IMG/VR virus record: IMGVR_UViG_3300027770_000026
Location: 186,001 to 250,000 of that record
Strand: one strand, 5' to 3'
Length of the DNA: 64,000 nucleotides
Both the position numbers and the translations under genes were made by a program. Of this stretch, positions 14,880 to 62,236 are shown piece by piece. Within the stretch, counting starts at the first letter, position 1; the number at the start of each line of letters is the position of its first letter. The notes under the pieces are model-generated. The model ran no database searches. It was not told the DNA's origin and saw nothing but the letters and a program-made list of their open reading frames with translations.

Positions 14880-14925
14880 AGTCAGATAATTACTATAATT
14901 GGCGTTTTTACAACTAAGGAACCAC

Positions 14926-15711
14926 ATGAAGTATCTAACAAACAAAGATCTGCTACGCGAAATTCATTTGAGTAAGAACAGCTACTGTTCCTACGTTGCT
15001 AAGACCGACTCAACTTACGACCTAATCCTGCCCAGTGTTGAGCGCATTAATAGGCTAACCATTAGCCAAGCGCGTAAAGCCCGCGCAACTCGTATGGAAG
15101 TTGAAGCTAAGGCAACAGGCACACCGATCGAAGTAGATCCAAAAGATATTGCAGTTACGGATATTGTGTTCCGTATCATGACTTGGGATCATATCCCGCT
15201 AAGTCCTGGACGTAAGAAGACCCCAAAGATTACTAGTGACCACCACGTAAAGGTAAACTTCCCTCCCTTCCAACACTACAAGCTCACAGATGAAAAGGCA
15301 CCATTTTGTGTGGGTAAGAGCCATTGGCGTGGTGACATCGAAAGTGGTCACTATTGCAGGGACAAGGGCAAAATGACAGACAATCTAGCTCGCATGTTCC
15401 TCAAGCTTTGCGAGCGTTATAGTAGTCGCAGCAACTGGCGTGGATACACTTACGTAGATGAAATGCGTGGGCAAGCACTACTACAGTTGAGCATGATTGG
15501 ACTACAGTTTGACGAAAGCAAGAGCTCAAATCCTTTTGCTTACTACACTGCTGCTATTACCAACAGCTTCACACGTATTCTCAATACCGAAAAGCGTAAT
15601 CAAAACATTCGAGATGACATTCTTGAAATGAATAATCTTAACCCCAGCTATACGCGCCAGCTTAACAATGAAGAAGCCATGCGTAAAGCCAGAGATCATG
15701 GTGATGAGTAA
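14926..15711 (+). CDS. gp55: Late-transcription sigma factor, gp55-like
   Basis: KYLTNKDLLREI...ERYSSRSNWRGYTYVDEMRGQALLQL...FDESKSSNPFAYYT; AAGGA SD before ATG 14926. Confidence 0.9.
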   Translation: MKYLTNKDLLREIHLSKNSYCSYVAKTDSTYDLILPSVERINRLTISQARKARATRMEVEAKATGTPIEVDPKDIAVTDIVFRIMTWDHIPLSPGRKKTPKITSDHHVKVNFPPFQHYKLTDEKAPFCVGKSHWRGDIESGHYCRDKGKMTDNLARMFLKLCERYSSRSNWRGYTYVDEMRGQALLQLSMIGLQFDESKSSNPFAYYTAAITNSFTRILNTEKRNQNIRDDILEMNNLNPSYTRQLNNEEAMRKARDHGDE

Positions 15712-35727: not shown

Positions 35728-38700
35728 ATGGCTACTTTTAACTTAATTCAGATGAAGCGCAGTGCAACTCCGGGAAAAGTCCCCACAACACAGGACTTAT
35801 CGCTGGGAGAATTTGGTATAAACACTTACGATGGTAAGGTTTTTATCAAAAAGGACGACGGTACGCCTAGTATCGTTGAAGTTGGCGTCAGAGGCGCCAC
35901 TGCAGTTCAAAATGTATTTTATGTAAGTAAAAGTGGTAATGATGCAAACGACGGAAAGAGCCTAGATAAGTCCAAACTTACAATTAAGTCTGCTGTAGCA
36001 GCAACTCGCGCATTAGTTGCAACTGCAACTGCGACCGTAGCCAATGGGTCAATTACTGCATTATATGTAACAAATCCAGGCGCCGGGTATGAATTACCCT
36101 TAATCCCAACCGTCACAATCTTTGGCGACGGTACCGGAGCAAGAGCAGTACCTATTATCAGTAGCGGATCAGTTATAGGTTTTACAATACTAGATAGAGG
36201 TATTGACTACACTTACGCCGATGTATACATAACACCGGCTGGCGCAGGACGCACTGGTGCAGGCTCAACCATATTTGTCAAGAGCGGCGACTATACAGAA
36301 GATAATCCAATTTACATCCCAGCCGGAGTAAGCATTGTTGGCGACAGTTTGCGTTCGGTGACAATTCGTCCGCAAAACACAACGCTGGACTTGTTTTGGG
36401 TTAATAACAAGAGCTACTTTACTGAAATGACTTTCAGAGATCATAAGGCTCCGGCTGCAATTATCGCATTCCCCTCAGTTGACATTACTGGCATTGAAAA
36501 TACCAATCCTGCCCGTGTAACGTTCTCGGGAGTATTCATATATGACAGAGTTAAATGTTCACGTGACGTTGGACTTATTGTAGATGCTCTTGCACAAGAC
36601 ATTAAATTTCCTGGTCTAGATGGCACAAGCCAAAGCATGTTTGCTGGCTTGCAGTACTGGACACAAAGTGGATACAGTATTCCAAATGTGTACCCAACAT
36701 CAGAAGTAACAGCAACACTGGGCGCACTTGCTCAACTTAAACTAGAAATTGCTGCGTTGCTTGGACCGGTGATGACTATAACTACGGACTCACTAGTTGA
36801 CGTAATTATTAACATATTAAATGGTACAACAAATCCTGCTACAGTCACGGATCTGATAGTACCAAACGGTACAACAGCAATTACAGCAACGGACGTTGTT
36901 AACGCATACGCTGACATACAAGCAGCAAAGACTACAATTATAGATAATATTATTAACTGGATTAACACTGTTGGTGCTCCGGGCATAACTTACGACGAAG
37001 CCCTTTGTCGCAGAGACCTTGGTTATATCATTGACAGTGTGTGCTACGACTTGTTGTACGGCGGCAACCGTCAAGTAATTCAAAATGGTATCTACTACTT
37101 GGGGTTCTCGGAAACGGACACAGCAATTCCAGGTGAGATTCCTCAGGTAACTGCTGCATATAACTATCTAAAGAGTATTGTTCCTTTGGTCATTGAAGGA
37201 ACAGCAATTGCATCACCTCGTCAGACTAAGGTTGTACAAGTTACAACAGGTAGTAATGGCACCGTAACACAGTCTAATCTAGCAACTAGCAATATTGACA
37301 TGATATTAGATATTATTAATACCGGACCAGCTGCATACGTAACTGCTGGAACACGTACACCAATTGGTCTAGTTGCAGCAAGCGGCAATGCTACCAATGC
37401 ATATAACAAGTTAATAGCTAATAGAGATTTCCTACGTGCAGAAGTAATTGCTTACATTGATCAGGAGACAATTTCGTTTGATCGTGCCAAGTGCTATCGT
37501 GACCTTGGACTCATTGTGGATTCTATTGCAACTGACGTGACATTCACCGATAGAACACAAACAACTTTTGCAGGTATCCAGTATTGGAGTCAGGCTGCAC
37601 TAGCATCGTCTAGCGAAATAAATCCGGGTGAGATTGCAGCTACAATTAACGCATATACATATCTTAAAGCAATTGCACTAGATATTATTCAAGACATATC
37701 AACACATGTTCTATATACACCGGTGTCGTATCCTCGAGTGACAGCAGCATCTATACCTACATCTGCAGTAACCGACCCTACAGTTATTTCTGCTATTAGT
37801 GACAATTTTGATCTGTTACTTGATATATTGACCGATGGCAATACCAATAACGTAACAGAGCGTATTATTTCAAGTGGTTTGATTATTGCAGGCAATACAA
37901 CGCAGCAATATCATGCGGCATTACTCTTAAATGCTAACACAGATTTCTTTAAGGAACAAGTAACATTAAGAATTGCTAACCAATTCCCGTTGTTAGTATA
38001 CAATACCGCTACTTGCGAGCGAGACGTACAATATGTTACTAGTTGCATAAGCAGAGACAATCTATTTGGTGGCAATCGCCAGACTGTGCAAGCAGCAGTA
38101 TACTATTATAGCTATCTAGCAGCTAGTACAGTACCAACAGAAATACAGCAAATTGAAAAAGCTTACAAGTATATCAAGATATTAGCTAGCTACATTATAC
38201 GTGGGCTACCAATGCCTTATGTATATCAAACTGGAGAATTACAAGACTTTGTAACTGCTTCCGGTGTTGGTACATTGACGCAAGTCACAGTGGCACAGAA
38301 CCTAGTAGATTATATGTTGGGCATCATCAATGATAAAACAACAGCAGATGCACCTGGATACGCCGGCATCTCAGAATTTAGTACAACGTATCGTCGTGCG
38401 GGCGAGCAATTACTAGCCAACAAAGAATTCATTAAGGCAGAAGTTGTTGCGTACCTAGAAGGATACACGTATAACCGTACAACATGTTCACGTGACACCG
38501 GACTCATTGTGGATGCGCTGGTACAAGACTTATTGTTTGATGGCGATAGCCAATCAACATTTGCAGCAATCCAGTACTGGAGTCAGACAGCAGAACGTTC
38601 AATCCCAGCAGGAGAGATTGCAGCAACAGTAGCGGCAATTGACTTTGTTATCACTCAGACTAATGCATTGTCTATTAGAACAGCAGACAAGACTAATATT

Positions 38701-41700
38701 GAAAATGGTTTTGACTTAATAAGAAATCTATTGGATGAAACTGTTAACGTAGCAACAATCACCAGCGGCATAGTTCCTAACAGTATTGAACCTGATCGCG
38801 ATGCGCAAGCTGCGTATGATGCGCTACAAGCAGCCAAAGCAACAATCATTGACGATACGATTGCAGACATTGCAGGTACGTTCCCGTCATTTGATCAACC
38901 AATTACGGGCGCAACTGCAGCAAGTCCTGTTGTACTAACTATTACAGGTCACGCCTTTGCAGATGGTGACTCCATTAGAATCAACAACATTGAAGGCATG
39001 GTTGAGCTAAACGGCAATCGTTACTACACTAAGAACACTGGCGCAAATACCGTAGAGCTATACTTAGATGCTACATTGCTAACTGCTCTAGACGGTACAG
39101 GATTTACAGCGTACGAGACAGGCGGTTATGCAGATACACAGACTGCAGCGAAATGCCGCAGAGATTTGGGCTACATGATTGACAGTGTTAGCTTTGATTT
39201 GTTGTATAACGCTGACCCAACTAACACTGTTCAGTCTAACAGACAAGCAGTACAATCAGGCGTTTACTATTGGAATCACTCAACTACTGTAAGCATAGTA
39301 CCTGGCGAAAAACCAATTGTAACAGCAGCATACGATTACATCAAGACATTGTCGTCGTACATTGTTGAAGGACGCGAGGTTCCAACAGTATACGGTACAG
39401 TGCCACAAGTGATGCCAGAGGGGCCAATGGCAATTGGTACAACACAAGACGTTAACAAGATTACTGACAAGCTTGACCTGATGATTAACATTATCAATGC
39501 AGGCCCAAGTGTTGCACCAAATCCAGAACCAATTAGCCTAGCACGTATCGGTTCATTTAATTACAACCGCACCAAGTGCTCACGTGACTTAGGACTGATC
39601 GTAGACGCCATTGCACAGGACATTAAATTCCCAGGCACCAGCGGCGACAGTCAAACAGTGTTTGCTGGCCTGCAATACTGGACACAGAACGACGGGTATA
39701 GTATCTCAAACATTGCACCAAGTGCAGAAGTTGCAGCAACAGTTGGTGCACTAGTGCAGTTGAAAGCGCAAATCACTGCAGTTGCTGCAGCTACATCTGC
39801 TACAACAGATGAACTAATTGATCTTATCATAAACATTATCAATAGAATTATCGATCCAGCTGATGTTACCGATTTGATTATACCAAACGATGCGATCGCT
39901 AACACCGGAGCAATAGCTACAGCCTACGCAGCAATACAATCGGCCAAGACAACAATTCGCGCCAACATAGTTACTTGGGTTAACACTAACTATCCAGCAT
40001 TAGTATATAACTCTACAACTTGTAGTCGAGACGTTGGTTTTATAATTGACAGCGTATGCTATGACTTGTTGTATAACGGCAACCGTCAGGCAATTCAAAG
40101 CGGTATCTACTATCTAGGCTTCTCGTCAACTGATAGTGCAGTGGCAGGTGAAATACCACAGGTAACTGCCGCTTACACCTATCTAAAGAGCATACTGCCT
40201 TCTATCATTGAAGGGACACCATTGGCTACAACATATCAAACAGACGTAGCACAAGTTACATCGGGTAGCAGCGGTACACCAACACAGTCTACACTTGCAG
40301 CCGACGCAGTAGATATCATACTAGACATTATTAATAATGGTCCTGGTACATACCTTGACGCTGGCACACGTACTCCAATTGGTCTAGTTGCCGCTGGCGG
40401 TAATGCTAATAACACTTATACACGGTTGCAAGCTAATAGAGACTTTATCCGTGCAGAAGTAATTGCTTACATTGATACTACAGTTGTAACGTACGATCAT
40501 CTCAAGTGCTCACGCGACCTTGGGTTGATCGTTGACGCACTAGCACAAGACTTGAAGTTCCCAGGACTAGACGGCAACAGCCAAAGCATGTTTGCTGGCT
40601 TGCAGTACTGGACTCAAGCAGATGGTTATAGTGTTCCTGATGGATCTCCTAGCGAGAAGGCCGCTACACTTGATGCACTAGCATATCTCAAGTCGCAGGT
40701 TGCAGGATTGGCTGGTGTAACAATTGATTCAACTACAAATGCACTATTTGACACTATCATCGATATACTAGATGGTACAACACCTCCGGCTAGCGTAACT
40801 GATCTGATTGTACCAAACGGAACAACAGCAAGTGTTGTTACTGCAGTAACTGATGCATATGCTGCAATTCAAACAGCAAAAGCAACACTACCTGCTGCTA
40901 CAGTTGCATACATACAAGGACTACCTGCGTACTCGGGTCTAGTATTTGATACAGGATTGTGCGAGCGCGACGTTGGTTACATATTAGACAGTATTTCATA
41001 TGACGTACTGTATGGCGGTAATCGTCAGGCAATACAAAGCGGTATCTACTATCTAAACTTCTCAAGTACAGTGACTGCAATTCCAAACGAAGTACCGCAG
41101 GTAACTGCTGCGTATGAATACTTGAAGTCAATTATCCCATCTATTGTTACAGGTACACCGGTTGCAACACTATATCAAACAGAAGTTGCACAGGTAATCT
41201 CAGGTAGCAGTGGTGCAGGTGCAGCAGCATCCGTACAGGCAAATGTTGATTTGATATTGGATATCATTATCAACGGACCAAACGCTTATATTACTCCAGG
41301 TACAAGAACACCAATTGGACTAGTAGCAGAAACAAACGCAACTATACTGAATGCCTATAACAAGTTGGTAGCAAATCGTAGTTTCTTACGTGCAGAAATC
41401 ATTGCGTATATTGACTATGTACTACAGCAGAAGTATCAAACAACAGCTAACGCTGCATATCTACTAAACGCTAACCGTGCGTTCATTGTATCAGAGCTAA
41501 TTGGATTTACGGACGAAAACTACGCAATACAGCACCCATACTCGAGCGGAGATACTATTTCTATTCGTCAGGTTGTTGGTATGACAGAAGTCAATAACGG
41601 TTATATACATCAGATCACCAATGCAACCAACACCAACCCAGTTAGACTAACATTTAATAAGGGTCATGCCTTTGGAGATACTACTTCGATGAGACTATCT

Positions 41701-43545
41701 GCTGTAGGCGGAATGAACGAAGTTAATGGCAATCGTTACTATGCACGTTTCTTTAATACTACAGAAGTTGAACTGTTCAATGACGTTAAACTAACAGATC
41801 CTGTTGATGGAACACTGTTTGGTTCATACACCAGCGGCGGCCAGGCAGAAACAGACAGCTTCTATTATGTACGAAAGATAGATGGCGACAGCATTGATCT
41901 GTATCTTGATCGTGCGCTAACACAACCAGTTGATGCAACTAACTGGGGTTCGTATATTACCGGTGGTATTGCTGGAACTGGCGCATTACCAGTAAGCCCA
42001 TACGTACACAACTGCTCCAGTATCACTACAACTGGCACAGGTATGCGTGTTGACGGTAACTTGAGTACTGGATTGAAGTCTATGGTCCTCGACTCGTTTA
42101 CCCAAATTAACGAAGGTGGTAACGGGATTGAAATCATCAACCGCGGTTACGCACAGCTCGTATCCATTTACACCATTTGTACTGACATTGGTATTTTGTG
42201 TAAGGGCGGCGGCTTCTGTTCCGTTGCTAACAGTGACAGCAGCTTTGGTACATACGCACTAGTTGCGGATGGATTAAGTGAAGTATTGTATTCGGGTGTA
42301 ACAGACGGCGACTTGCAAACAGGCAAGGCTATCAACCTTAAGGGGCTAACGCACCGTCCAAACTATGGCGATGCGATGGACGTCACTAGTGAATTAATTG
42401 TCGCAGACGCATATATCGTAGCAGCTAGTGCAACTATTAACGATCCTGGCACAGGTTATAAGCCGGGCGATTTGATGGAACTCGACGGCATAGTAGGCAC
42501 TTCGCCAAAGTTCCGCGTATCAACAGTTAAGATTGTTAGCGCATCCGTTAATACCTTAGTATCGGGGTCACTTGCAATAGGTGATAGATTTACGTTCTCT
42601 AAGGGATATAGTACATCTGCTGTGCTTGAAGTAGCAACAGTTACGCCATCGGTTACATTTACTATTATCGAAGCTGGCGTTAAGAACACGGGAGTAACAG
42701 CTCTAACAAATATTAGTCCCGATATCTCGTCATCGGCTGCTGTAATAACAGTGGATCTGGTGTACGGAATTGAATCGGTCGGAGTTGCAGCACCATTTTA
42801 TGGCGAACTAATAGAAACTCCATCAAACCCATCTGTTACTATAACATCTACTGGTATTGGCGTAGATGCACTGCTAGACGTAATTTATTCGGTACGCTTG
42901 ACTTTTGACGATCCGCACTACTTTAGGGGCGACGAGCAGATTGTAGCTAGTGGGTTTACGGGTAGTAATAATCAATCGTTGCTAAACGGTAATACGTATT
43001 TTATCAAATTAACTAACAATGCGTACAAAGCAGATCTACACATAGACTCTGCTCTAGCACTGGGAGTTGATACATCACTGTATACTGCATCATATGATGG
43101 TGGTGGCACCGCTACACTACACGACTACTATACCGTAGTAACAGCAACAGAAGGACCAGTTGCAACTGCAGGCACATACGAAGGATTACGTCAAAGTCAG
43201 ATTGGACTAGAAATTGCTGTTAAGCGTCCAATTGTAGATGAATCTGCAGTTGAGTTCCGCCAACGTAGTATTGTATCGTCCTCGGGCCATACATTTGAGT
43301 ACATTGGTTCGGGAAATATACTAAGTACAGCAACACCAGAAGCGGGTGCTTATCCAATTGCAGCCAACGAAGTAGTTGAGCTGCGTGGAGGTAAAGCATA
43401 CTTTACTGGAACTAACGAACAAGGCGACTTTAAAATCGGTACTGAACTGGTAATTAATCGCGATACTGGTACAATCTCTGGTAGAACATTTAACAAGAGC
43501 TTGTTCGCAGTACTAACGCCATACATATTGGCACTCGAGGGATAA
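35728..43545 (+). CDS. Giant virion fibre protein: Mtd-N-like anchor, split beta-helix, ten tandem phycobiliprotein-like CxRD repeats, small beta-barrel repeats
   Basis: N-term IQMKRSATPGKVP..L.LGE.GINTYDG; FYVSKSGNDANDG and IFVKSGDYTE..PI.IPAGVSIVGDSLR beta-helix; CxRD repeats at Cys277-Cys1745; C-term SSSGHTFEYIGSG...FTGTNEQGDFKIG. Confidence 0.75.
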   Translation: MATFNLIQMKRSATPGKVPTTQDLSLGEFGINTYDGKVFIKKDDGTPSIVEVGVRGATAVQNVFYVSKSGNDANDGKSLDKSKLTIKSAVAATRALVATATATVANGSITALYVTNPGAGYELPLIPTVTIFGDGTGARAVPIISSGSVIGFTILDRGIDYTYADVYITPAGAGRTGAGSTIFVKSGDYTEDNPIYIPAGVSIVGDSLRSVTIRPQNTTLDLFWVNNKSYFTEMTFRDHKAPAAIIAFPSVDITGIENTNPARVTFSGVFIYDRVKCSRDVGLIVDALAQDIKFPGLDGTSQSMFAGLQYWTQSGYSIPNVYPTSEVTATLGALAQLKLEIAALLGPVMTITTDSLVDVIINILNGTTNPATVTDLIVPNGTTAITATDVVNAYADIQAAKTTIIDNIINWINTVGAPGITYDEALCRRDLGYIIDSVCYDLLYGGNRQVIQNGIYYLGFSETDTAIPGEIPQVTAAYNYLKSIVPLVIEGTAIASPRQTKVVQVTTGSNGTVTQSNLATSNIDMILDIINTGPAAYVTAGTRTPIGLVAASGNATNAYNKLIANRDFLRAEVIAYIDQETISFDRAKCYRDLGLIVDSIATDVTFTDRTQTTFAGIQYWSQAALASSSEINPGEIAATINAYTYLKAIALDIIQDISTHVLYTPVSYPRVTAASIPTSAVTDPTVISAISDNFDLLLDILTDGNTNNVTERIISSGLIIAGNTTQQYHAALLLNANTDFFKEQVTLRIANQFPLLVYNTATCERDVQYVTSCISRDNLFGGNRQTVQAAVYYYSYLAASTVPTEIQQIEKAYKYIKILASYIIRGLPMPYVYQTGELQDFVTASGVGTLTQVTVAQNLVDYMLGIINDKTTADAPGYAGISEFSTTYRRAGEQLLANKEFIKAEVVAYLEGYTYNRTTCSRDTGLIVDALVQDLLFDGDSQSTFAAIQYWSQTAERSIPAGEIAATVAAIDFVITQTNALSIRTADKTNIENGFDLIRNLLDETVNVATITSGIVPNSIEPDRDAQAAYDALQAAKATIIDDTIADIAGTFPSFDQPITGATAASPVVLTITGHAFADGDSIRINNIEGMVELNGNRYYTKNTGANTVELYLDATLLTALDGTGFTAYETGGYADTQTAAKCRRDLGYMIDSVSFDLLYNADPTNTVQSNRQAVQSGVYYWNHSTTVSIVPGEKPIVTAAYDYIKTLSSYIVEGREVPTVYGTVPQVMPEGPMAIGTTQDVNKITDKLDLMINIINAGPSVAPNPEPISLARIGSFNYNRTKCSRDLGLIVDAIAQDIKFPGTSGDSQTVFAGLQYWTQNDGYSISNIAPSAEVAATVGALVQLKAQITAVAAATSATTDELIDLIINIINRIIDPADVTDLIIPNDAIANTGAIATAYAAIQSAKTTIRANIVTWVNTNYPALVYNSTTCSRDVGFIIDSVCYDLLYNGNRQAIQSGIYYLGFSSTDSAVAGEIPQVTAAYTYLKSILPSIIEGTPLATTYQTDVAQVTSGSSGTPTQSTLAADAVDIILDIINNGPGTYLDAGTRTPIGLVAAGGNANNTYTRLQANRDFIRAEVIAYIDTTVVTYDHLKCSRDLGLIVDALAQDLKFPGLDGNSQSMFAGLQYWTQADGYSVPDGSPSEKAATLDALAYLKSQVAGLAGVTIDSTTNALFDTIIDILDGTTPPASVTDLIVPNGTTASVVTAVTDAYAAIQTAKATLPAATVAYIQGLPAYSGLVFDTGLCERDVGYILDSISYDVLYGGNRQAIQSGIYYLNFSSTVTAIPNEVPQVTAAYEYLKSIIPSIVTGTPVATLYQTEVAQVISGSSGAGAAASVQANVDLILDIIINGPNAYITPGTRTPIGLVAETNATILNAYNKLVANRSFLRAEIIAYIDYVLQQKYQTTANAAYLLNANRAFIVSELIGFTDENYAIQHPYSSGDTISIRQVVGMTEVNNGYIHQITNATNTNPVRLTFNKGHAFGDTTSMRLSAVGGMNEVNGNRYYARFFNTTEVELFNDVKLTDPVDGTLFGSYTSGGQAETDSFYYVRKIDGDSIDLYLDRALTQPVDATNWGSYITGGIAGTGALPVSPYVHNCSSITTTGTGMRVDGNLSTGLKSMVLDSFTQINEGGNGIEIINRGYAQLVSIYTICTDIGILCKGGGFCSVANSDSSFGTYALVADGLSEVLYSGVTDGDLQTGKAINLKGLTHRPNYGDAMDVTSELIVADAYIVAASATINDPGTGYKPGDLMELDGIVGTSPKFRVSTVKIVSASVNTLVSGSLAIGDRFTFSKGYSTSAVLEVATVTPSVTFTIIEAGVKNTGVTALTNISPDISSSAAVITVDLVYGIESVGVAAPFYGELIETPSNPSVTITSTGIGVDALLDVIYSVRLTFDDPHYFRGDEQIVASGFTGSNNQSLLNGNTYFIKLTNNAYKADLHIDSALALGVDTSLYTASYDGGGTATLHDYYTVVTATEGPVATAGTYEGLRQSQIGLEIAVKRPIVDESAVEFRQRSIVSSSGHTFEYIGSGNILSTATPEAGAYPIAANEVVELRGGKAYFTGTNEQGDFKIGTELVINRDTGTISGRTFNKSLFAVLTPYILALEG
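36541..41520 (+). repeat. Ten ~150-170 aa protein repeats, alternating A/B types
   Basis: Cys codons at 36556, 37006, 37492, 38014, 38485, 39154, 39577, 40021, 40507, 40960. Confidence 0.9.
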
Positions 43546-52815: not shown

Positions 52816-53925
52816 TTACTTGGCGCTGACCGCAGCAGTGATGTACGCACCGTACTTCTTAGCAAACTCAGGGTAGGTCGTCATCTTGCTACCCTGGAAC
52901 ACCAAACCGTACTGCTGCATCGCAACCTTGACAGCAAGGATGCAGATCTCGGTGTTGAAGTTATCCATCATGTAACGGAAGAAGCAGTCGACCATGCCGT
53001 GCCACTCCTTGTCGTTAAGCTTACCCTTGTTCTTGGTGTAGTAGTCGCGCAGCTCGTAGCAGAGCGAAGTCATGAGACTGTACTGCGCACTGATCTCCTT
53101 GATCTTGAGGTCCTTGACCTTACCCGACAACACATCGCCAGGATTAGGCAACTGACCGTTGGTCTTGCGGTGCGCCATGAACTTTACAGCCAAGCCTTCA
53201 CCAACTGCGCCACTGACCAAGTCCATCACCGTGCTGTCGCTAGCAGCCTTGTCCTGCAGCATGTCGCTAACGAAATGCCAGCTACGGGGCGTAGCGAACG
53301 CACGACTGGCGCTGTTGGGGCTGAAGTCGTAGAGGTCGCCCTTAGCGTAGTTAAGGTAACCAACCACGTCCGGGTGGATGTTGTTATCCACAGCCCACAA
53401 CATCCACGTATCAAAGTCTGCACGGACCTCCAAGTGAACGAAGCGATTAGCCAACGGAGCCGGCATGCGATACGTGACGCCACGGTCACCTTCGCGGTTA
53501 CCTGCGGCAATGATCACCACGTTGTCGGGCAGTTCGTACTCGCCAATGCGGCGATTCAGCACCAGCTGGTATGCGCTGGCCTGCACCGCAGGAGCAGCAG
53601 AGTTGAGCTCGTCCAAGAACAGCACCACGTAGGGGTACTTCGCAGCCTGCTCCTTGCTGGGCAGTTCAGCCGGGGGAGCCCAACGCATACGACCGCTAGT
53701 GCCGTCGAAGTACGGCATACCCTTGAGGTCGGTTGGGTCCAGCAACGCCAAACGCAGGTCAATCAGCAGACCGCCACCTGCGCGAGCAATCTGCGCAGCC
53801 ATGTCGCTCTTGCCCAAGCCCGGCGGACCCCAGATGAAAACTGGACGCTTCGTGCGCATGGCCACGTCAACAGCCTTGCGGGCTTCGGTCAACGTCACAG
53901 TGCGAATTTCGTGGGACATATTCAA
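52816..53925 (-). CDS. MoxR-like AAA+ ATPase
   Basis: IWGPPGLGKS, LFLDELNSA, AAGNR, MPAPLANRFVH, FATPRSW. Confidence 0.9.
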   Translation of the reverse strand: MNMSHEIRTVTLTEARKAVDVAMRTKRPVFIWGPPGLGKSDMAAQIARAGGGLLIDLRLALLDPTDLKGMPYFDGTSGRMRWAPPAELPSKEQAAKYPYVVLFLDELNSAAPAVQASAYQLVLNRRIGEYELPDNVVIIAAGNREGDRGVTYRMPAPLANRFVHLEVRADFDTWMLWAVDNNIHPDVVGYLNYAKGDLYDFSPNSASRAFATPRSWHFVSDMLQDKAASDSTVMDLVSGAVGEGLAVKFMAHRKTNGQLPNPGDVLSGKVKDLKIKEISAQYSLMTSLCYELRDYYTKNKGKLNDKEWHGMVDCFFRYMMDNFNTEICILAVKVAMQQYGLVFQGSKMTTYPEFAKKYGAYITAAVSAK

Positions 53926-56774: not shown

Positions 56775-57194
56775 TTACTTAAACCATCCAATCTTCTCAC
56801 CAGCAGCGACACGACGTTGCCATTCTGCGAGACTGCCTGGATAGCGTATTGCCCAAATCATCCAGAACGCCATGAATGCACTTACGCCCATAACCAATTT
56901 CCAGTTGTGGGTAGTAAGCCAAAGTATAACCAAACTTGCATCCATGCAAATGAACATGATCCATTTGGCCTTGCTTGGATAAACTTTTTTGTCTTTCCAG
57001 TTTGTAAGAAACGGGCCAAACAGCTTGTGATTCATCATCCAATTGTGCCATTTATCGCTGCTCTTAGCAAAGCAATATGCTGCTATGATTGTTGGTGTAC
57101 TCCAGGGAATACCGGGAGTAACCATACCAATATACGCAATACCCAAGCATATCATGCCTGCAACGAAAAACAATGCCTTCTTGATCTTGTCCAT
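56775..57194 (-). CDS. YbaN/DUF454-like inner membrane protein
   Basis: G..G...PGIP..TP.IIAAYCFAKSS.KWHNW.MNHKLFGP.L.NW...P.KAK. Confidence 0.8.
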   Translation of the reverse strand: MDKIKKALFFVAGMICLGIAYIGMVTPGIPWSTPTIIAAYCFAKSSDKWHNWMMNHKLFGPFLTNWKDKKVYPSKAKWIMFICMDASLVILWLTTHNWKLVMGVSAFMAFWMIWAIRYPGSLAEWQRRVAAGEKIGWFK

Positions 57195-57213: not shown

Positions 57214-57227
57214 TATTTACATAAGTA
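57214..57227. promoter_or_regulatory. Overlapping divergent late-type promoter variants (CATAAGTA +, TGTAAATA -)
   Basis: In the 38 nt gap between the DUF454 gene and heme oxygenase. Confidence 0.45.
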
Positions 57228-57232
57228 CTACT

Positions 57233-57787
57233 ATGAGCCTAAAAGAACTTACCAAAGACAAACATACTGCTGCGGAACATACGCCATTTATGCAGTCAGT
57301 GTTCAAACGCACAATGCCCGTTGAAATTTGGGCAGACTATACCCTAAACAAGATGCATTGGTACAATGCTATCGAAATGCGAGCAAGAGCTGCAGGTCTA
57401 TTGGAAGACCTTCCGGGGCTCGAACGTACATATCTACTGTATCAGGATTACAGAGCTATGTGTAAAGTTCCCAATCACTTCTACACTGTTAGCACCATGC
57501 GCTACTACACATACATTATGGATTTAGTTGATGTTGATGCCATCATGGCCCACTTGTATGTATGGCACATGGGCGACTTATATGGCGGGCAGATGATTAA
57601 GCAGATTATGGATCATGTGTCGCATCGTAATTTAGATTTTGATAATCCTGACTTGCTCAAAGCAAACATCCGAGTTAAGTTGCATGATGGCATGGCCAAT
57701 GAAGCTAACTGCGCATTTGATTGGGCAATACGTATTATGAACGAGTACAATGAGGCATTGACTAGTGGACATATGGCAAAAGGCTGA
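57233..57787 (+). CDS. hemO: Heme oxygenase
   Basis: LKELTKDKHTAAE proximal His helix; AHLYVWHMGDLYGGQMIK distal helix; EAN.AFDWAI. Confidence 0.92.
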   Translation: MSLKELTKDKHTAAEHTPFMQSVFKRTMPVEIWADYTLNKMHWYNAIEMRARAAGLLEDLPGLERTYLLYQDYRAMCKVPNHFYTVSTMRYYTYIMDLVDVDAIMAHLYVWHMGDLYGGQMIKQIMDHVSHRNLDFDNPDLLKANIRVKLHDGMANEANCAFDWAIRIMNEYNEALTSGHMAKG

Positions 57788-58436
57788 AGCTTGTGGCGAT
57801 AGAGTCGTGCAATTATTGCAGGGCATTGGCCCAGCAGTTGATCATCCTAGTAATCCTCCTACTACTTTTGGTTGGCACAGTTATATACACTCGTCTGACC
57901 GTGTACGCCGTGCCCACGTTGACATCATCGATGCAAGAGAGACACACAAATTATGGATCATGCACTGTTGCATATTTCCCCACGTAAATGATAATAGTCC
58001 TATTTTTGGTTTTGACATTATTAGCGGTCCTAGTCGCATTAGTGGAGCATTTCTAGACTTCTCTTTTGCAGGCGTTAATGACCATTCAATGATGAAATGG
58101 TTTGACCAACGTGTGACAAACTTAAATTGGAAGAAAGAGCGTCAACTGCCAGACTGGGCTGCTGCTATCTTTAGTCCTGCAATGGTAGCCGCAGGTGCAA
58201 TAACTGACGAACAGGAAGTTGATCAGTTAACAGGACTTGGTGTTGAATGTTTGGAGTACTATTTAGAGCATGTAGGCCGTCAGAGAAACGATCACAAGGA
58301 CAGTTATCACGAACAAAATAATTACTGTATAAACCAAAAGCGGAATCCACATACTCCACGGACTATGAATATATTGGGTCTTACGCCGGACCAAGTCACA
58401 GAGTTTTTCGAACACCTAATGTTTCCGGAACTTTAA
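57765..58436 (+). CDS. pcyX: Ferredoxin-dependent bilin reductase, PcyX/PcyA-like
   Basis: RRAHVDI, WIMHCCIFP, PIFGFDIISG, GAFLDFS, RQLPDWAAAIFS, QNNYCINQKRNPHT; overlaps hemO. Confidence 0.85.
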   Translation: MDIWQKAEACGDRVVQLLQGIGPAVDHPSNPPTTFGWHSYIHSSDRVRRAHVDIIDARETHKLWIMHCCIFPHVNDNSPIFGFDIISGPSRISGAFLDFSFAGVNDHSMMKWFDQRVTNLNWKKERQLPDWAAAIFSPAMVAAGAITDEQEVDQLTGLGVECLEYYLEHVGRQRNDHKDSYHEQNNYCINQKRNPHTPRTMNILGLTPDQVTEFFEHLMFPEL

Positions 58437-58795
58437 AAGTATTCTGCTGTTCCGTCGTCGTTTGCTCGCTTGTTAATCTTAGGTTTAGCTAGTGCATCAA
58501 CGTATTCGTCGTTTTCGCCTGCAACAAACGTACATAATGCTTTAACATATTGGTCCATGATATCACCGTCTGTTTCACCGGTATATCCTTCTACTTTTAG
58601 TTTGTCAATGAAAGCAGCATTCCAATCTAGTTCAAAGTAACCGTTGTGTGGCTGATCTGGATCAACATGCATCTTAACATCAACCCAGGGCTCGCCTTTC
58701 TTTGTGGCTTGATCCTTAGGTGATAGTACACGCTTCTTTTTTGGTGCGGGAGTGTTCTCTTCCCCTTGCGCTACACTAGTCTTCTTTCGTGCCAT
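58433..58795 (-). CDS. Conserved phage hypothetical protein
   Basis: KDQATKKGEPWV...GYFELDWN.AFI..L...GY.G. Confidence 0.65.
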   Translation of the reverse strand: MARKKTSVAQGEENTPAPKKKRVLSPKDQATKKGEPWVDVKMHVDPDQPHNGYFELDWNAAFIDKLKVEGYTGETDGDIMDQYVKALCTFVAGENDEYVDALAKPKINKRANDDGTAEYF

Positions 58796-58833: not shown

Positions 58834-59097
58834 TCACTCACCGTATCTAATTCTGTACCAAAGCGTTGCTTCATCATCCAACTGTGCCCAGATTCTAACT
58901 TGGTAGGTTTGGGTGTCGTGTTCTGCTGCCACAGAGATTTCCACCGGGATGTCAAGCGATCTAACATATTCAATTTTACTCCTCTGTGGTTCTTGCTTAC
59001 AACAATGATCTACATAACTGCCTGGGTCCATACTATCGTATGAAATATCATCAATTTGAAATAACGCTATTACCGTATGCGTCATCAAGTACCCCAT
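58834..59097 (-). CDS. Small hypothetical protein
   Basis: Follows queE; ends TYQVRIWAQL...ATLWYRIRYGE. Confidence 0.55.
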   Translation of the reverse strand: MGYLMTHTVIALFQIDDISYDSMDPGSYVDHCCKQEPQRSKIEYVRSLDIPVEISVAAEHDTQTYQVRIWAQLDDEATLWYRIRYGE

Positions 59098-59951
59098 GCA
59101 TTCTTAAACAAGTCACATTGTAGTCGTGGGCTATACCACCAACCTTCCTGCATGGCAAGTTCTGCTACCTGACGTGCATTAAGGAAGTATGAATCCACAG
59201 TGCCACCAACCGGCATTAGATAGACCGGACAATGTACACCAGCAGCTTGATAAAGGCTAACAGCACGACGAACATCATCAAGATCATGCATATTACTAAC
59301 CACAAACTTGAGATAAAAACTGCTCCCACCGCCAGACACCATATTATAATAACTTCTAGCAATGTCAGGTTGTATAGCCTCTTCCCAAGCTTCACCACTG
59401 ATTGATAGTTTGGGACTGCAACTCCACGTAACGTGGATGTTACTTTGCGTCTCAAAAAACGTAGCCAACTCCTTGGTGATCTTTTGCGTAGTGTTTGTTT
59501 CAAACGTGACATTCTTTAGGTCTGCAAGCAATGGGTGTTGCAATAATTGTATATAGCTCTTTTGCCATCCTAGCAGTGGTTCTCCGCCAGTGATAACCAA
59601 ATGAATGTCTCGTCCGTTATCCTGTGTCCACTTGCCATTAGGAATAATGTCCACAAAACGTTTTGCAATTTCGTCAATAGTTAGTGTGGGGCTAAACTTC
59701 TTAAATTTAGGATGCCAACTTGCATAACTATCACATCCAGTTGGTGCAAGCGGCAAAGAATCATAACTATCGTACTTGCTAAGTTGATTAGCAATACGTT
59801 CGGGCTCATCGCTGCGTTCACCAAGCGGTAAGCCAAATCCTCTACACTGGAAGTTACATCCAAATGTACGGAAGAACACACTGGGCACACCTGCCCAACG
59901 TCCTTCACCTTGTATGCTGTAAAAGATTTCTGCTGTTTTAATCTTGCTCAT
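59085..59951 (-). CDS. queE: 7-carboxy-7-deazaguanine synthase (radical SAM)
   Basis: EIFYSIQGEG..GVPSVFFRTFGCNFQC...CDS, VITGGEP, ETN, SPKL, SPRLQ. Confidence 0.9.
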   Translation of the reverse strand: MSKIKTAEIFYSIQGEGRWAGVPSVFFRTFGCNFQCRGFGLPLGERSDEPERIANQLSKYDSYDSLPLAPTGCDSYASWHPKFKKFSPTLTIDEIAKRFVDIIPNGKWTQDNGRDIHLVITGGEPLLGWQKSYIQLLQHPLLADLKNVTFETNTTQKITKELATFFETQSNIHVTWSCSPKLSISGEAWEEAIQPDIARSYYNMVSGGGSSFYLKFVVSNMHDLDDVRRAVSLYQAAGVHCPVYLMPVGGTVDSYFLNARQVAELAMQEGWWYSPRLQCDLFKNAWGT

Positions 59952-60799
59952 GGTAAGTTGTTCTCTATTAGGAATTTTTCATATACTTCCTGCCAGGACT
60001 CGGATTGCAATATATTGGTACTGGTCATTTGTGTATTGAGTGGACGCTTTGCTGGTTTATTTAGGTTAGCTAGTTTGCTAGGTACAATTTCTGTAGACAG
60101 ATTATACGCTAGTTTAATGCACTTTGCAAATTCATAAAAGCTATCGCCGTAATTTGCTCGCGGTACAAGATGATTGAGCCCGCGGTCCAACTTCAAACGT
60201 TCCCATGTCTTCCTTGCAATCCAATCACTACTAGTTGGAACGGTGAATTGATCATTAACTACTTCTATTCTATCCTTAGTTGCAGCCGCACATAGTATTG
60301 CAGTATGAAAGTTCTTATTACTTGTAGAATATACTGCAGATACTCGATAGATGGTATAGGAGGTGGTATATGACATCACTTCTTCTTCGCCATCAGACTT
60401 GCTGCTCCCATAAAAGTTTACGGGATTCTTATCCGACTGTTCAACATACTTTCCGGTTAAATCAGTAAAACCGTCAAACACATAATCAGTAGAATAATGT
60501 ACTAGATGAAAGCCCATGTTATTACTGAGCCGTGCAAGCTGTGCAGGAAATTGAACATTAGCATGCCAGCAAAGATGCCTATTCATCACATCTTCGGAGC
60601 CGTCTACGTCAGTATATGCAGCAGCATTGATTACGTATTTAGGGGCAACTGCACGAACAAAACGTTCAACTGCAGGCGAGTCCACAAGATCAAATTTGGA
60701 TCTATCATGCGCAATGATTTCATAATCACTAGGTGCAAACTTTTGTAGACTAGTGCCTACTTGACCAGTTGCACCAAAGATTAGTACACGGTCACCCAT
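59948..60799 (-). CDS. rmlD: dTDP-4-dehydrorhamnose reductase
   Basis: GATGQVG, INAAAYTDVD, YSTDYVFDG, NFYGSSK, VNDQ, AKRP. Confidence 0.9.
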   Translation of the reverse strand: MGDRVLIFGATGQVGTSLQKFAPSDYEIIAHDRSKFDLVDSPAVERFVRAVAPKYVINAAAYTDVDGSEDVMNRHLCWHANVQFPAQLARLSNNMGFHLVHYSTDYVFDGFTDLTGKYVEQSDKNPVNFYGSSKSDGEEEVMSYTTSYTIYRVSAVYSTSNKNFHTAILCAAATKDRIEVVNDQFTVPTSSDWIARKTWERLKLDRGLNHLVPRANYGDSFYEFAKCIKLAYNLSTEIVPSKLANLNKPAKRPLNTQMTSTNILQSESWQEVYEKFLIENNLP

Positions 60800-61352
60800 A
60801 ATGTACTGCCTGCGTAACATCAATGCCCGTGCGGTCCTTATCAGCTTGAATTATCTGATTACGCATTGGAAGTAGATAACTTGTAAACTCGTCAACACTC
60901 CAAAAGTTGATGCAATACTCGTCGTCCTTCTGCCATAAGCTCTTAGTGACACCATAGTTAAAAATAGTGTTGTCTTCTAGCGCAAGGAAGCCATGCGCGT
61001 ATCCGGGCGGCACATAGAGATAATTGAGATTCTCCGTACTAAGTTCAAAGATACCAGTGTTTAGATAGGTTGGTGAATCCTTACGCAGGTCAATAACAAA
61101 GTCAACTGCACTACCTTGAATCACACTTACTAGCTTACCCTGTGGATTCTTTAGCTGGTAATGCAATCCACGTAGCACATACTTCTTGTTATATGAAGTG
61201 TTTTGCTGCAGTACTTCAAACTCTTTTTCCCAACCAAACCACGAATGATTATATGTTTCTTGAAATGATCCACGATTGTCTGCAAAGTTCTTAAACTGAT
61301 ACAGGCGTAGGTCGTTGAGATTTTCAAACATTTCGTAAGTTTTTTCATTCAT
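60792..61352 (-). CDS. rmlC: dTDP-4-dehydrorhamnose 3,5-epimerase
   Basis: DNRGSFQE, VLRGLHYQ..PQGKLV, DLRKDSPT, PPGYAHGF. Confidence 0.92.
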   Translation of the reverse strand: MNEKTYEMFENLNDLRLYQFKNFADNRGSFQETYNHSWFGWEKEFEVLQQNTSYNKKYVLRGLHYQLKNPQGKLVSVIQGSAVDFVIDLRKDSPTYLNTGIFELSTENLNYLYVPPGYAHGFLALEDNTIFNYGVTKSLWQKDDEYCINFWSVDEFTSYLLPMRNQIIQADKDRTGIDVTQAVHYG

Positions 61353-62236
61353 CGAATTAGTTTCCATAGGTATTGTCCGTAAGGGGTCTTGTCGCATAGT
61401 TTAGCAGTAACTGCTAGGTCTTCGTGTAATATCCATTCATTTTTGAATGCAGCCAAATGTGGAGAGCCTATTAGTACATTCTGCGTAGTCTGCATTATAT
61501 GTACATATTCAGCAGCTTGCAAGAGCGATGGTGCATTACCCGTGTCAAACCAAACAGTACCTTCGTCTAGAATTGTTACAAACAGTTCTTCGCGATTGGC
61601 ATACTCTTTGTTAACATCGGTAATTTCAAACTCGCCTCGATCGGATGGTTTTAAGTTAGCAGCAATTTCAAATATGGACGTTGGATAGAAATACAATCCA
61701 GTTACTGCGAGGTCGCTCTTTGGTTCCTTTGGCTTTTCTTCCAAAGAAAGCACACGACCATGATCATCTAATTCTACTACGCCAAATCGTTCTGGATCCT
61801 GTACATGCATGGCGAAGCATACTGCATTCTTTGCAGCTCGTGCTAACTGCAATGCTATATCAAACTTTGACCCATGGAATAGATTGTCTCCAAGTATCAA
61901 TGCAATACGTTCAAATTGATCATATCCATCGATTTGGTCTGCTACAATAGTAAATGCTTGTGCAATACCACGTGGCTTTGGCTGTACTGCAAAATGCAAG
62001 TTAATGCCAAACTGTTGCCCTGCACCCTCGAACAATTTTTTAAATACTGTTTGCTCGTCTGGGTTTGTGATTAGTACAACGTCCCTAATACCTGCAGTAA
62101 TTAGTGTAGTTAGTGCATAGTAGATCAGTGGCTTGTCGTATACAGGTACTACCTGTTTAGTACATGCTAGTGTTGCAGGGAAAAGACGTGAACTCTTGCC
62201 CGCGGCAAGAATAATGCCCAGTGTTTTTCTATCCAT
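61349..62236 (-). CDS. rmlA: Glucose-1-phosphate thymidylyltransferase
   Basis: GIILAAGKSSRLFPAT...KQ..PVYDKP, LILGDN, EEKP..PKS..AVTGLYFY, RGEFEITD, WFDTG. Confidence 0.94.
   Translation of the reverse strand: MDRKTLGIILAAGKSSRLFPATLACTKQVVPVYDKPLIYYALTTLITAGIRDVVLITNPDEQTVFKKLFEGAGQQFGINLHFAVQPKPRGIAQAFTIVADQIDGYDQFERIALILGDNLFHGSKFDIALQLARAAKNAVCFAMHVQDPERFGVVELDDHGRVLSLEEKPKEPKSDLAVTGLYFYPTSIFEIAANLKPSDRGEFEITDVNKEYANREELFVTILDEGTVWFDTGNAPSLLQAAEYVHIMQTTQNVLIGSPHLAAFKNEWILHEDLAVTAKLCDKTPYGQYLWKLIR

What the first reader, a model, noticed from the sequence alone, without database searches (positions are those of the whole stretch)
57233..58436. Heme oxygenase + PcyX-like reductase under a late-type promoter: likely pigment supply for the fibre
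Seen: overlapping hemO and bilin reductase genes. The reductase keeps residues equivalent to PcyA His74, His88 and Asp105, has Asp at the Glu76 position and an NPH motif near the C-terminus, which I recall as PcyX-type features. Known: HO plus PcyX/PcyA convert heme via biliverdin to phycoerythrobilin or phycocyanobilin, and the purpose of hemO-pcyX in phages of non-cyanobacterial hosts is unresolved. No photosynthesis genes are in the window. Inference: the acceptor is the phage's own ten-Cys fibre, completing a heme-to-pigmented-virion pathway. No lyase or ferredoxin is visible here, so attachment is either autocatalytic or encoded elsewhere.
Basis: partly seen in the sequence, partly recalled or inferred. 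Interest (0 to 1): 0.88.

Follow-up and report, generated by a model that had tools for sequence, protein, structure and literature searches.

The report
Phage heme-to-bilin gene pair
A large freshwater-type phage carries the known two-gene set that turns host heme into a pink or blue bilin pigment, and its giant tail fibre repeats the short cysteine motif that pigment-binding antenna proteins use, which makes the unproven idea of a pigmented fibre cheap to test.

Summary
The two genes are real. hemO is at 57233-57787 and a ferredoxin-dependent bilin reductase at 57765-58436, overlapping by 23 nt. The reductase is PcyX-type: the best solved relative is PcyX 5OWG (E 3.9e-45, against about 1e-11 for PcyA), and it has His67, Asp84 and the PcyX-specific Asp (Asp53). 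This cassette is already known from marine metagenomes, pelagiphage Mosig and large freshwater phages, so it is a new member of a known kind.

The canonical late motif ATAAATA precedes four structural genes in the window but not hemO, which has the one-mismatch variant ATAAGTA.

The fibre link is unproven but not empty. The 2605-aa fibre has ten all-helical units with a near-invariant CxRD. A profile of these units hits only phycocyanin alpha chains in the PDB (E 1e-4), with Cys aligned on Cys84.

Against the link:
- The similarity vanishes when the motif is removed.
- The predicted fold is not a globin.
- Mosig has the cassette without the module.
- In 69 of 80 relatives the cassette sits behind Hsp20-ClpS, not near fibres.

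For the link: one related phage population also carries both features.

My best reading is a heme-breakdown, stress-type module. I put a pigmented fibre at about 15%.

The parts
57233..57787 (+). hemO, heme oxygenase (184 aa)
   Evidence: Pfam PF01126 at 48.2 bits against a cut-off of 23. His11 aligns with the proximal His20 of HmuO, and the distal helix GDLYGGQ is at 114-120. A hemO lies directly upstream of the reductase in 79 of 80 related loci.
57765..58436 (+). PcyX-type ferredoxin-dependent bilin reductase (223 aa, GTG start)
   Evidence: PF05996 at 62.3 bits. Best solved relative is PcyX 5OWG at E 3.9e-45, against 1.1e-11 for PcyA. His67, Asp84 and Asp53 correspond to PcyX His69, Asp86 and Asp55. 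The N-terminus aligns with homologues from residue 1. The tree places it in the clade with Mosig PcyX, apart from cyanophage PcyA.
57765..57787 (+). 23-nt overlap of the hemO 3' end with the reductase 5' end (translational coupling)
   Evidence: In relatives 78 of 79 pairs overlap, by 1-32 nt.
57221..57227 (+). ATAAGTA, a one-mismatch variant of the late-promoter core ATAAATA, ending 5 nt before the hemO ATG
   Evidence: The variant occurs at 7 sites in the window, 3 of them within 40 nt upstream of same-strand gene starts. Function is not shown.
56775..57194 (-). DUF454 (YbaN-like) membrane protein gene, divergent left neighbour
   Evidence: PF04304 at 96.4 bits. Homologues at 55-85% identity lie 3-8 kb upstream of hemO, on the opposite strand, in 9 related loci.
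58433..58795 (-). 120-aa gene (phrog_13349, 'virion structural protein'), convergent right neighbour; its 3' end overlaps the reductase stop by 4 nt
35728..43545 (+). 2605-aa tail-fibre-like protein with ten CxRD units (five A/B pairs).
14899..15711 (+). gp55-like late sigma factor (context for the promoter question)
   Evidence: phrog_12791 at E 4.1e-80.

Best explanation
This is a translationally coupled two-gene auxiliary cassette.

Mechanism:
- HemO opens host heme to biliverdin IX-alpha, releasing iron and CO.
- The PcyX-type reductase then uses ferredoxin to reduce biliverdin by four electrons. The product is predicted to be phycoerythrobilin, because the PcyX-specific Asp is present.
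- The chemistry follows from homology and conserved catalytic residues. It was not assayed.

Placement:
- The pair is a mobile module of aquatic phages.
- Here it sits inverted inside a minus-strand block of nucleotide and sugar metabolism genes, in a jumbo myophage whose portal is nearest the PA5oct / Atu_ph07 group.

Inferred role (the part I am least sure of): heme disposal and cytoprotection in the infected cell.
- It would remove free heme, recover iron and make an antioxidant bilin.
- The reductase would pull the oxygenase reaction forward by removing its product.
- I infer this from the relatives, where the pair is the tail of an Hsp20-ClpS-hemO-pcyX operon next to DnaK.
- The product-determining residue also varies freely, as expected if the exact bilin matters little.
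For: Identity:
- Pfam scores are above the curated cut-offs.
- PcyX 5OWG at E 3.9e-45 against PcyA at 1e-11.
- The catalytic His and Asp and the heme-ligand His are present.
- Asp53 corresponds to PcyX Asp55. Its absence in phage CB_2 goes with phycocyanobilin (PCB) formation (PMC11480375).
- The tree separates the family, including Mosig PcyX, from cyanophage PcyA with 100% support.

Cassette behaviour:
- hemO is upstream in 79 of 80 loci, and 78 of 79 pairs overlap.

Role:
- Hsp20 and ClpS lie directly upstream in 69 of 80 loci, and DnaK in 62.
- The ClpS stop overlaps the hemO start by 4 nt in 51 of 69 loci.
- Position 53 is D 60, S 35, N 9, E 8, H 5, C 3 among 120 homologues, with at least 10 changes on the tree.
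- The window's neighbours are ThyX, DNA ligase, glutaredoxin, RNase H, QueD, QueE and RmlABCD, not virion genes.
- Published opinion calls the purpose enigmatic and lists iron supply among the ideas.
Against: - No Hsp20 or ClpS lies next to the cassette in this window.
- If iron or heme removal were the whole point, HemO alone might do, yet the reductase is almost always kept with intact catalytic residues.
- No ferredoxin is visible in the 64 kb, and about 200 kb of the genome was not seen.
- The fibre's CxRD motif and the second phage population that carries both features leave a specific acceptor possible.
- Nothing here measures activity, product or timing of expression.
Confidence: 0.5

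Rival explanations
1. Pigmented fibre. The bilin made by HemO and PcyX is attached, without a lyase, to the CxRD cysteine of each of the ten helical units of the 2605-aa fibre. This gives a chromophore-bearing virion, possibly a light sensor for adsorption.
For: - CxRD is kept in 998 of 1012 motif instances.
- CXRD is the attachment motif of phycobiliproteins and of lyase-independent BBAG-1 and BBAG-3 (PMC10151467).
- The B-unit profile hits only phycocyanin alpha chains, best E 1.2e-4, with Cys on Cys84.
- PF00502 is the top, though sub-threshold, Pfam hit for 2 of 4 B units.
- hhalign gives 88.9% probability, P 2.4e-6, against P about 0.5 for a reversed control.
- A phycobiliprotein HMM finds 147 of 150 family members, while the best unrelated protein reaches only E 0.72.
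- All 38 cultured-phage records with the module are Synechococcus phages, whose hosts are rich in bilins. They include the S-PM2 tail fibre p091.
- The window phage is not of the cyanophage family and brings its own bilin synthesis.
- A related phage population also has both features, in the same order.
- Light-dependent adsorption of S-PM2 has no known photoreceptor, and tail fibres are suspected (PMC6628666).
Against: - With the four CxRD columns deleted, the similarity falls to P 0.03 for B units and 0.59 for A units.
- Global hhalign probability is 3%.
- The A-unit profile does not find phycobiliproteins.
- Two models, the second with pLDDT above 90 over residues 10-320, match no globin or phycobiliprotein. 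They resemble long helical bundles.
- Mosig has the cassette but no module.
- No module lies within 10 kb of the reductase in 80 loci.
- Apart from the window's own phage, the two top-80 lists share no contig.
- Prochlorococcus phages with light-dependent adsorption had no hit.
- The two phages with both features are related, so the co-occurrence may be inheritance.
Confidence: 0.15
2. Chromophore for a soluble bilin-binding protein. The bilin would load a phytochrome, a BBAG-type globin or another sensor of the host, or one encoded in the unseen three-quarters of the phage genome, and so change signalling in the infected cell.
For: - The CB_2 phage enzyme pair can load a phytochrome, and BBAGs are proposed as partners (PMC11480375).
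- Pre-PcyA genes of heterotrophs are clustered with BBAGs.
- The reductase is kept with intact catalytic residues in nearly all loci.
Against: - No globin, GAF or phytochrome gene is in the window.
- None is among the recurrent neighbours in 80 loci.
- The product-determining residue varies widely.
Confidence: 0.15
3. Ordinary cyanophage function. The host is in fact a cyanobacterium, and the pair tops up bilins for phycobilisomes during infection.
For: - This is the classical explanation for the cyanophage genes ho1, pebS and pcyA.
- The fibre module is otherwise known from Synechococcus phages.
Against: - The portal is nearest to jumbo phages of Pseudomonas, Sinorhizobium, Agrobacterium and Xanthomonas, at 45-50% identity.
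- No photosynthesis genes are in the 64 kb.
- The reductase belongs to the PcyX clade with pelagiphage Mosig, not to cyanophage PcyA.
Confidence: 0.08

Closest known systems
hemO-pcyX cassette of uncultured marine phages (PcyX_EBK42635, PDB 5OWG) and of Pelagibacter phage Mosig EXVC030M
   Same: - Heme oxygenase sits directly upstream of, and overlaps, a PcyX-type reductase.
- Equivalents of catalytic His69 and Asp86 and of the PcyX-specific Asp55 are present.
- The C-terminal NPHTPR motif is present.
- It matches 5OWG at E 3.9e-45 and Mosig at 38.5% identity.
   Different: - Identity to the marine enzymes is only about 38-45%.
- The window enzyme belongs to a subclade whose nearest sisters carry His instead of Asp at position 53.
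- Mosig's pair has AATAAATA 10 nt upstream and lies just before the neck genes. Here the pair is inverted inside a block of metabolic genes and has only a variant motif.
ho1 / pcyX-like (pcyA/X) genes of large freshwater phages (Chen et al. 2020 preprint 10.1101/2020.02.13.942896; CB_2 in PMC11480375)
   Same: - Large aquatic phages of presumed non-cyanobacterial hosts with adjacent ho1 and pcyX-like genes.
- The 69 of 80 nearest loci with Hsp20-ClpS-hemO-pcyX are of this general kind.
   Different: - The CB_2 enzyme lacks the Asp and makes phycocyanobilin. The window enzyme has it.
- No alaS is seen in this window.
- No Hsp20 or ClpS lies beside the pair here.
Cyanophage and cyanobacterial PcyA
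   Same: Same fold family (PF05996), the same catalytic His/Asp pair, and a four-electron reduction of biliverdin.
   Different: - Only 23-29% identity.
- PcyA has Glu where this enzyme has Asp53.
- The two are separated by a long branch with 100% support.
- A different product is predicted.
Phycobiliprotein / BBAG chromophore site (for the fibre units only)
   Same: The fibre has C-x-R-D-h-G-Y-h-h..V.a.L..GG, against phycocyanin alpha C84-A-R-D-I-G-Y-Y-L-R-M-V-T-Y-C-L-V-V-G-G. There is one cysteine per unit of about 150 aa of all-helical sequence.
   Different: - No significant similarity remains outside the motif.
- The predicted fold is an elongated helical bundle, not a globin.
- The Pfam score is below the gathering threshold.

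Membership tests
Heme oxygenase (PF01126, HO-1 / HmuO type) | Profile match above the curated threshold | tested here: met
   48.2 bits against a cut-off of 23, E 1.5e-12.
Heme oxygenase (PF01126, HO-1 / HmuO type) | Proximal heme-ligand histidine and the distal-helix Gly-rich motif | tested here: met
   His11 aligns with HmuO His20. GDLYGGQ at 114-120 aligns with GDLSGGQ.
Heme oxygenase (PF01126, HO-1 / HmuO type) | Conversion of heme to biliverdin IX-alpha | not testable with these tools
   Needs an enzyme assay.
PcyX clade of ferredoxin-dependent bilin reductases | FDBR profile match above threshold | tested here: met
   PF05996 at 62.3 bits against a cut-off of 31.
PcyX clade of ferredoxin-dependent bilin reductases | Closer to PcyX than to PcyA, PebS, PebA or PebB | tested here: met
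   5OWG at 157 bits against 48 bits for the best PcyA. No PebS, PebA or PebB chain at E<=0.01. It clusters with Mosig PcyX, apart from three cyanophage PcyA, with 100% support. This is a quick tree, and no Peb sequences were included.
PcyX clade of ferredoxin-dependent bilin reductases | Catalytic His69/Asp86 pair and PcyX-specific Asp55 | tested here: met
   His67, Asp84 and Asp53, read from the 5OWG alignment with a chain offset of 8. The role of Asp55 is as stated in PMC11480375.
PcyX clade of ferredoxin-dependent bilin reductases | Two-gene cassette with hemO directly upstream | tested here: met
   23-nt overlap here. hemO is upstream in 79 of 80 related loci.
PcyX clade of ferredoxin-dependent bilin reductases | Product is phycoerythrobilin via 15,16-dihydrobiliverdin | not testable with these tools
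   Needs HPLC of the reaction products. Position 53 varies in the family, so the product cannot be assumed for the whole family.
Bilin-binding globins (phycobiliproteins / BBAG), considered for the fibre units | CXRD attachment motif | tested here: met
   Ten of ten units here. 998 of 1012 motif instances in the family.
Bilin-binding globins (phycobiliproteins / BBAG), considered for the fibre units | Family profile match above threshold | tested here: not met
   PF00502 at 14.8 and 13.6 bits against a cut-off of 22.2, and in only 2 of 9 window units. It was absent for the whole protein at E<=1.
Bilin-binding globins (phycobiliproteins / BBAG), considered for the fibre units | Globin-like fold | tested here: not met
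   Foldseek of two models against the PDB shows no phycobiliprotein or globin among the listed top 50 hits, and the best E is 0.4 or higher.
Bilin-binding globins (phycobiliproteins / BBAG), considered for the fibre units | Sequence similarity beyond the motif | tested here: inconclusive
   With the motif: hhalign 88.9%, P 2.4e-6. With the motif deleted: P 0.031 in the same register for B units, 0.59 for A units.
Bilin-binding globins (phycobiliproteins / BBAG), considered for the fibre units | Covalent bilin binding | not testable with these tools
   Needs co-expression, spectroscopy and mass spectrometry.
T4-type late promoter | (T)ATAAATA shortly upstream of the gene | tested here: not met
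   No exact site lies before hemO. All four ATAAATA sites in the window precede same-strand genes in the virion-gene region, none of them hemO.
T4-type late promoter | A functional variant of the motif | tested here: inconclusive
   ATAAGTA lies 5 nt before the ATG. Three of the 7 copies of this variant lie within 40 nt upstream of genes, against a background of about 2%.

The most novel reading that the evidence does not exclude
The giant tail fibres of this phage, of its relatives and of Synechococcus myophages such as S-PM2 may be strings of small helical domains that each bind a bilin covalently through a phycobiliprotein-like CxRD site.

Phages of bilin-free hosts would then carry hemO-pcyX to make the pigment themselves. 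The chromophore-bearing fibre could be the missing photoreceptor behind light-dependent adsorption.
Probability: 0.15. Interest if true: 0.92.

Novelty: new member of a known kind. Interest (0 to 1): 0.6.

Why it matters
The purpose of hemO-pcyX in phages of non-photosynthetic hosts is an acknowledged open question (PMC11480375).

This locus adds a divergent freshwater-type member, in a jumbo phage of a lineage other than the cyanophage family.

Two observations narrow the question:
- In most relatives the pair is the end of an Hsp20-ClpS-hemO-pcyX operon. This points to heme disposal and stress management.
- The phage's own fibre repeats the phycobiliprotein attachment motif ten times. This gives a concrete acceptor candidate that a single co-expression experiment can confirm or dismiss.

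If the fibre were pigmented, it would be the first chromophore-bearing virion part. It would also be a candidate for the unexplained light dependence of cyanophage adsorption.

Tried and rejected
- **Nucleotide search.** Megablast of the locus against phage records gave no match.
- **Sigma-70 and terminator scans.** Both were at chance level around the pair.
- **TATAAATA with one mismatch.** There were 75 sites against 96 expected, so that scan alone is uninformative.
- **Single-protein scan for the reductase in viral contigs.** It found only the phage's own contigs. An alignment was needed.
- **Comparing the two top-80 lists of viral contigs.** Each list is a sample of more than 577, so the lack of overlap is weak evidence.
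- **'Zero overlap' among cultured phages.** I first read this as refuting the fibre idea. I withdrew that reading because all module-bearing isolates infect bilin-rich Synechococcus.
- **Fetching phycobiliproteins with the fibre profile.** The search returned only fibre fragments. I obtained them from cyanobacterial plasmids instead.
- **Scan of 185,579 GTDB genomes for the module.** One 4-kb contig, and no host clue.
- **A-unit profile against the PDB.** No phycobiliprotein signal.
- **Linking loci by sequence overlap.** Only one further population with both features.
- **Walking along long contigs.** Not attempted, because the look-up cap would not cover a genome.
- **Homology of the fibre units to globins.** Considered, and rejected on the fold and masked-motif tests.
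Full report
**What is there**

The + strand holds two ORFs at exactly the reported coordinates. One runs 57233-57787 (184 aa). The other runs 57765-58436 (223 aa, GTG start). They overlap by 23 nt.
- Pfam assigns the first to Heme_oxygenase (48.2 bits, cut-off 23) and the second to Fe_bilin_red (62.3 bits, cut-off 31).
- PHROGs agrees for the reductase.
- The oxygenase keeps the proximal ligand (His11 on HmuO His20) and the distal GDLYGGQ.
- The N-terminus of the reductase aligns with homologues from its first residues, so the GTG start and the overlap are real.

**Which reductase**

- Against all PDB sequences the best match is PcyX_EBK42635 (5OWG), at E 3.9e-45 and 157 bits. The best PcyA scores 1.1e-11, and no PebS, PebA or PebB chain appears at E<=0.01.
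- From the printed alignments, PcyA His74, Glu76, His88 and Asp105 correspond to His51, Asp53, His67 and Asp84. With the chain offset of 8 in 5OWG, these are PcyX His53, Asp55, His69 and Asp86.
- NPH is at 194-196.
- PMC11480375 calls Asp55 the PcyX-specific catalytic residue. It reports that the CB_2 phage enzyme, which lacks it, makes phycocyanobilin. So phycoerythrobilin is the predicted product here, by inference.
- That position is not fixed in the family. Among 120 homologues it is D 60, S 35, N 9, E 8, H 5, C 3.
- A quick maximum-likelihood tree needs at least 10 changes at that position. The window enzyme and an 85%-identical relative (both Asp) are sister to a His-bearing group.
- The whole family, including Mosig PcyX, is separated from three cyanophage PcyA by a branch with 100% support.

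**The phage and the local context**

- The window belongs to a 265,892-bp viral contig.
- It encodes a T4-type core:
  - gp23 capsid, portal and prohead protease;
  - gp25, gp53 and other baseplate proteins;
  - a gp55-like late sigma.
- Its portal is nearest (45-50%) to jumbo phages of Pseudomonas (PA5oct), Sinorhizobium, Agrobacterium (Atu_ph07), Xanthomonas and Cronobacter, not to the cyanophage family.
- The pair lies inverted inside a minus-strand block. In order:
  - before the pair: ThyX, DNA ligase, an L7/L12-like gene, DUF2201/VWA plus an AAA ATPase, a QueD-like PTPS, glutaredoxin, RNase H and DUF454;
  - then hemO-pcyX;
  - after the pair: a 120-aa gene, QueE, RmlD, RmlC, RmlA, RmlB and a phosphoribosyltransferase.
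- I found no ferredoxin, lyase, globin, GAF or photosynthesis gene among the window ORFs I scanned with Pfam.

**Promoter**

- All four ATAAATA sites in the window, counting both strands, lie 4-24 nt upstream of same-strand genes in the virion-gene region: baseplate wedge, a virion protein, a tape-measure-like protein and a gene after the capsid gene. With the gp55-like sigma, this identifies the late promoter.
- hemO has none. Its 38-nt intergenic region holds CATAAGTA, ending 5 nt before the ATG. The reverse strand holds TGTAAATA, which faces DUF454.
- ATAAGTA is the most gene-proximal of the 21 one-mismatch variants. Three of its 7 copies lie within 40 nt upstream of genes (hemO, the QueD-like gene, the large glycosyltransferase), against a background of about 2%.
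- In Mosig an AATAAATA sits 10 nt before hemO, and the pair directly precedes the neck genes.
- In relatives, ATAAATA occurs within 100 nt upstream of Hsp20 in 17 of 69 loci (14 of 52 distinct upstream sequences), and within 80 nt of hemO in 1 of 79.
- Late expression is therefore possible but not shown here.

**What travels with the pair elsewhere**

- An alignment-based scan found at least 577 viral loci. I examined the best 80, each with up to 10 kb of flank.
- hemO is directly upstream in 79 of them, and 78 of 79 pairs overlap.
- Hsp20 and ClpS lie directly upstream in 69, and DnaK in 62.
- CsgF, CsgG, curlin-repeat and FecR-like genes lie downstream in about 40-45.
- The ClpS stop overlaps the hemO start by 4 nt in 51 of the 69.
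- DUF454 homologues (55-85% identity) lie 3-8 kb upstream in 9 loci.
- No fibre module lies within 10 kb in any of the 80.
- This pattern, plus the free variation of the product-determining residue, is why I favour a heme-disposal, stress-type role. That role is inference. The literature calls the purpose enigmatic.

**The fibre**

- The 2605-aa protein at 35728-43545 has ten CxRD motifs in five A/B pairs.
- The family has 1050 representatives at 50% identity, with proteins of up to 6382 aa and about 30 units.
- It has at least 587 viral loci and only one hit in 185,579 cellular genomes.
- The cysteine is kept in 998 of 1012 motif instances.
- Cultured examples are 38 records, all Synechococcus myophages. 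They include the S-PM2 tail fibre p091 with five units.

**Is the fibre unit phycobiliprotein-like?**

Rockwell et al. (PMC10151467) state that CXRD is the bilin-attachment motif of phycobiliproteins. They also report it in BBAG-1 and BBAG-3, which attach bilins without lyases.

For:
- A profile of 67 cysteine-centred B units hits phycocyanin alpha chains as its top 28 PDB matches. The best E is 1.2e-4, the match covers residues 22-103, and Cys aligns on Cys84.
- PF00502 is the top, sub-threshold, Pfam hit for 2 of 4 window B units.
- hhalign against nine phycobiliproteins, taken from cyanobacterial plasmids, gives 88.9% probability and P 2.4e-6. A reversed control gives P about 0.5.
- A phycobiliprotein HMM run without filters finds 147 of 150 family members, 103 of them at E<=1e-3. 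The best of about 2000 unrelated proteins reaches E 0.72.

Against:
- Deleting the four motif columns drops the signal to P 0.031 (same register) for B units and 0.59 for A units.
- The global alignment probability is 3%.
- The A-unit profile finds no phycobiliprotein.
- Two AlphaFold models were made. The first has pLDDT 76.7. The second has 82.8, and above 90 over residues 10-320.
- Neither model matches a globin or phycobiliprotein. Their best, non-significant matches are long helical bundles.
- The viral structure library returns only other uncharacterised phage fibres.

I conclude that the resemblance is a shared motif of about 20 residues, not demonstrable homology of the domain.

**Co-occurrence**

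- Cultured phages with the reductase (Mosig and ten cyanophages) and those with the module share no record.
- A profile search of the complete Mosig genome finds no module.
- This does not refute the fibre idea, because every module-bearing isolate has a bilin-rich host.
- Using the DNA ligase that lies between the fibre and the pair, I fetched 77 relatives. Eleven show a CxRD fibre downstream of the ligase. Two show Hsp20-ClpS-hemO-(69 aa)-pcyX upstream.
- The two kinds of contig overlap at 99.9% identity. So a second phage population carries both features, in the same order.
- Its reductase is of the marine type: 53% identical to Mosig's and 37% to the window's. The two phages are related, so this may be inheritance.
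- No other link was found among the loci held.

**Verdict**

- The genes and residues are as described, and the cassette is a new member of a known kind.
- The late-promoter statement rests on a one-mismatch variant.
- The fibre hypothesis has a real but motif-level basis, and I put it at about 15%. It deserves the simple co-expression test. A positive result would also bear on the unexplained light-dependent adsorption of cyanophages such as S-PM2 (PMC6628666).

Noticed in passing
window 35728-43545: Giant fibre of ten all-helical units of about 150 aa, each with a near-invariant CxRD. The family has 1050 representatives, proteins of up to 6382 aa, and no solved or annotated structural relative. 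The B units resemble the phycocyanin alpha Cys84 site at motif level.
   Followed up: yes
L083-L161 (e.g. L083:8593-10657, L087:6608-8536, L086:12085-15785): In most relatives the pair ends an Hsp20-ClpS-hemO-pcyX operon, with the ClpS stop overlapping the hemO start by 4 nt in 51 of 69 loci. DnaK lies upstream. CsgF, CsgG, curlin-repeat and FecR-like genes lie downstream.
   Followed up: partly
window 32053-35642 (- strand) and 59948-63210 (- strand): A 971-aa protein with three glycosyltransferase domains and an FkbM methyltransferase lie divergent from the fibre gene. A complete rmlABCD set lies next to the pair. Together these hint at a glycosylated fibre. The glycosyltransferase shares the ATAAGTA upstream variant with hemO.
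   Followed up: no
window 49402-49797 (-): Phage gene with a ribosomal protein L7/L12 C-terminal domain (E 8.4e-08).
   Followed up: no
window 18523-18741 (+): 72-aa protein matching the histone H1-like Hc1 family (E 9e-11).
   Followed up: no
window 51162-51686, 59085-59951, 63385-63948 (-): A QueD-like PTPS, QueE and a phosphoribosyltransferase, suggesting a 7-deazaguanine pathway. The QueD-like gene has TATAAGTA 25 nt upstream.
   Followed up: no
window 49807-51039 and 52816-53925 (-): DUF2201 metallopeptidase/VWA protein and an AAA ATPase, reminiscent of a CobT/CobS-like pair. In Prochlorococcus phage P-SSM3, pcyA lies next to cobS (L162).
   Followed up: no
window 6421-6428, 14861-14868, 22878-22885, 31621-31627: All four ATAAATA sites in the 64 kb lie 4-24 nt upstream of same-strand genes in the virion-gene region (three annotated structural; one 136-aa ORF of unknown function). 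One ends only 4 nt before the predicted start at 14857. A gp55-like sigma is at 14899-15711.
   Followed up: yes
window 58433-58436: The reductase and the convergent 120-aa gene overlap by 4 nt at their 3' ends, with no terminator-like site between them.
   Followed up: no
window 21354-21779 (+): SegE-like GIY-YIG homing endonuclease (E 5.3e-34) between structural gene blocks.
   Followed up: no
fibre unit profile positions 217-310 (A3); window about 40180-40460: Weak local sequence similarity between the end of the B unit and a stretch of intermedilysin-type cytolysins (E about 9e-4). It is probably spurious and was not pursued.
   Followed up: no
L170 (Mosig 2701-3027) and L001:5427-5434: Mosig encodes its own 2Fe-2S ferredoxin, many 2OG-Fe(II) oxygenases and a ferrochelatase near hemO-pcyX. 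Its hemO has a late-type AATAAATA 10 nt upstream.
   Followed up: partly
window 43549-43896 (+): A 115-aa protein directly after the fibre gene recurs next to the fibre in 22 related loci. It may be a fibre assembly factor.
   Followed up: no
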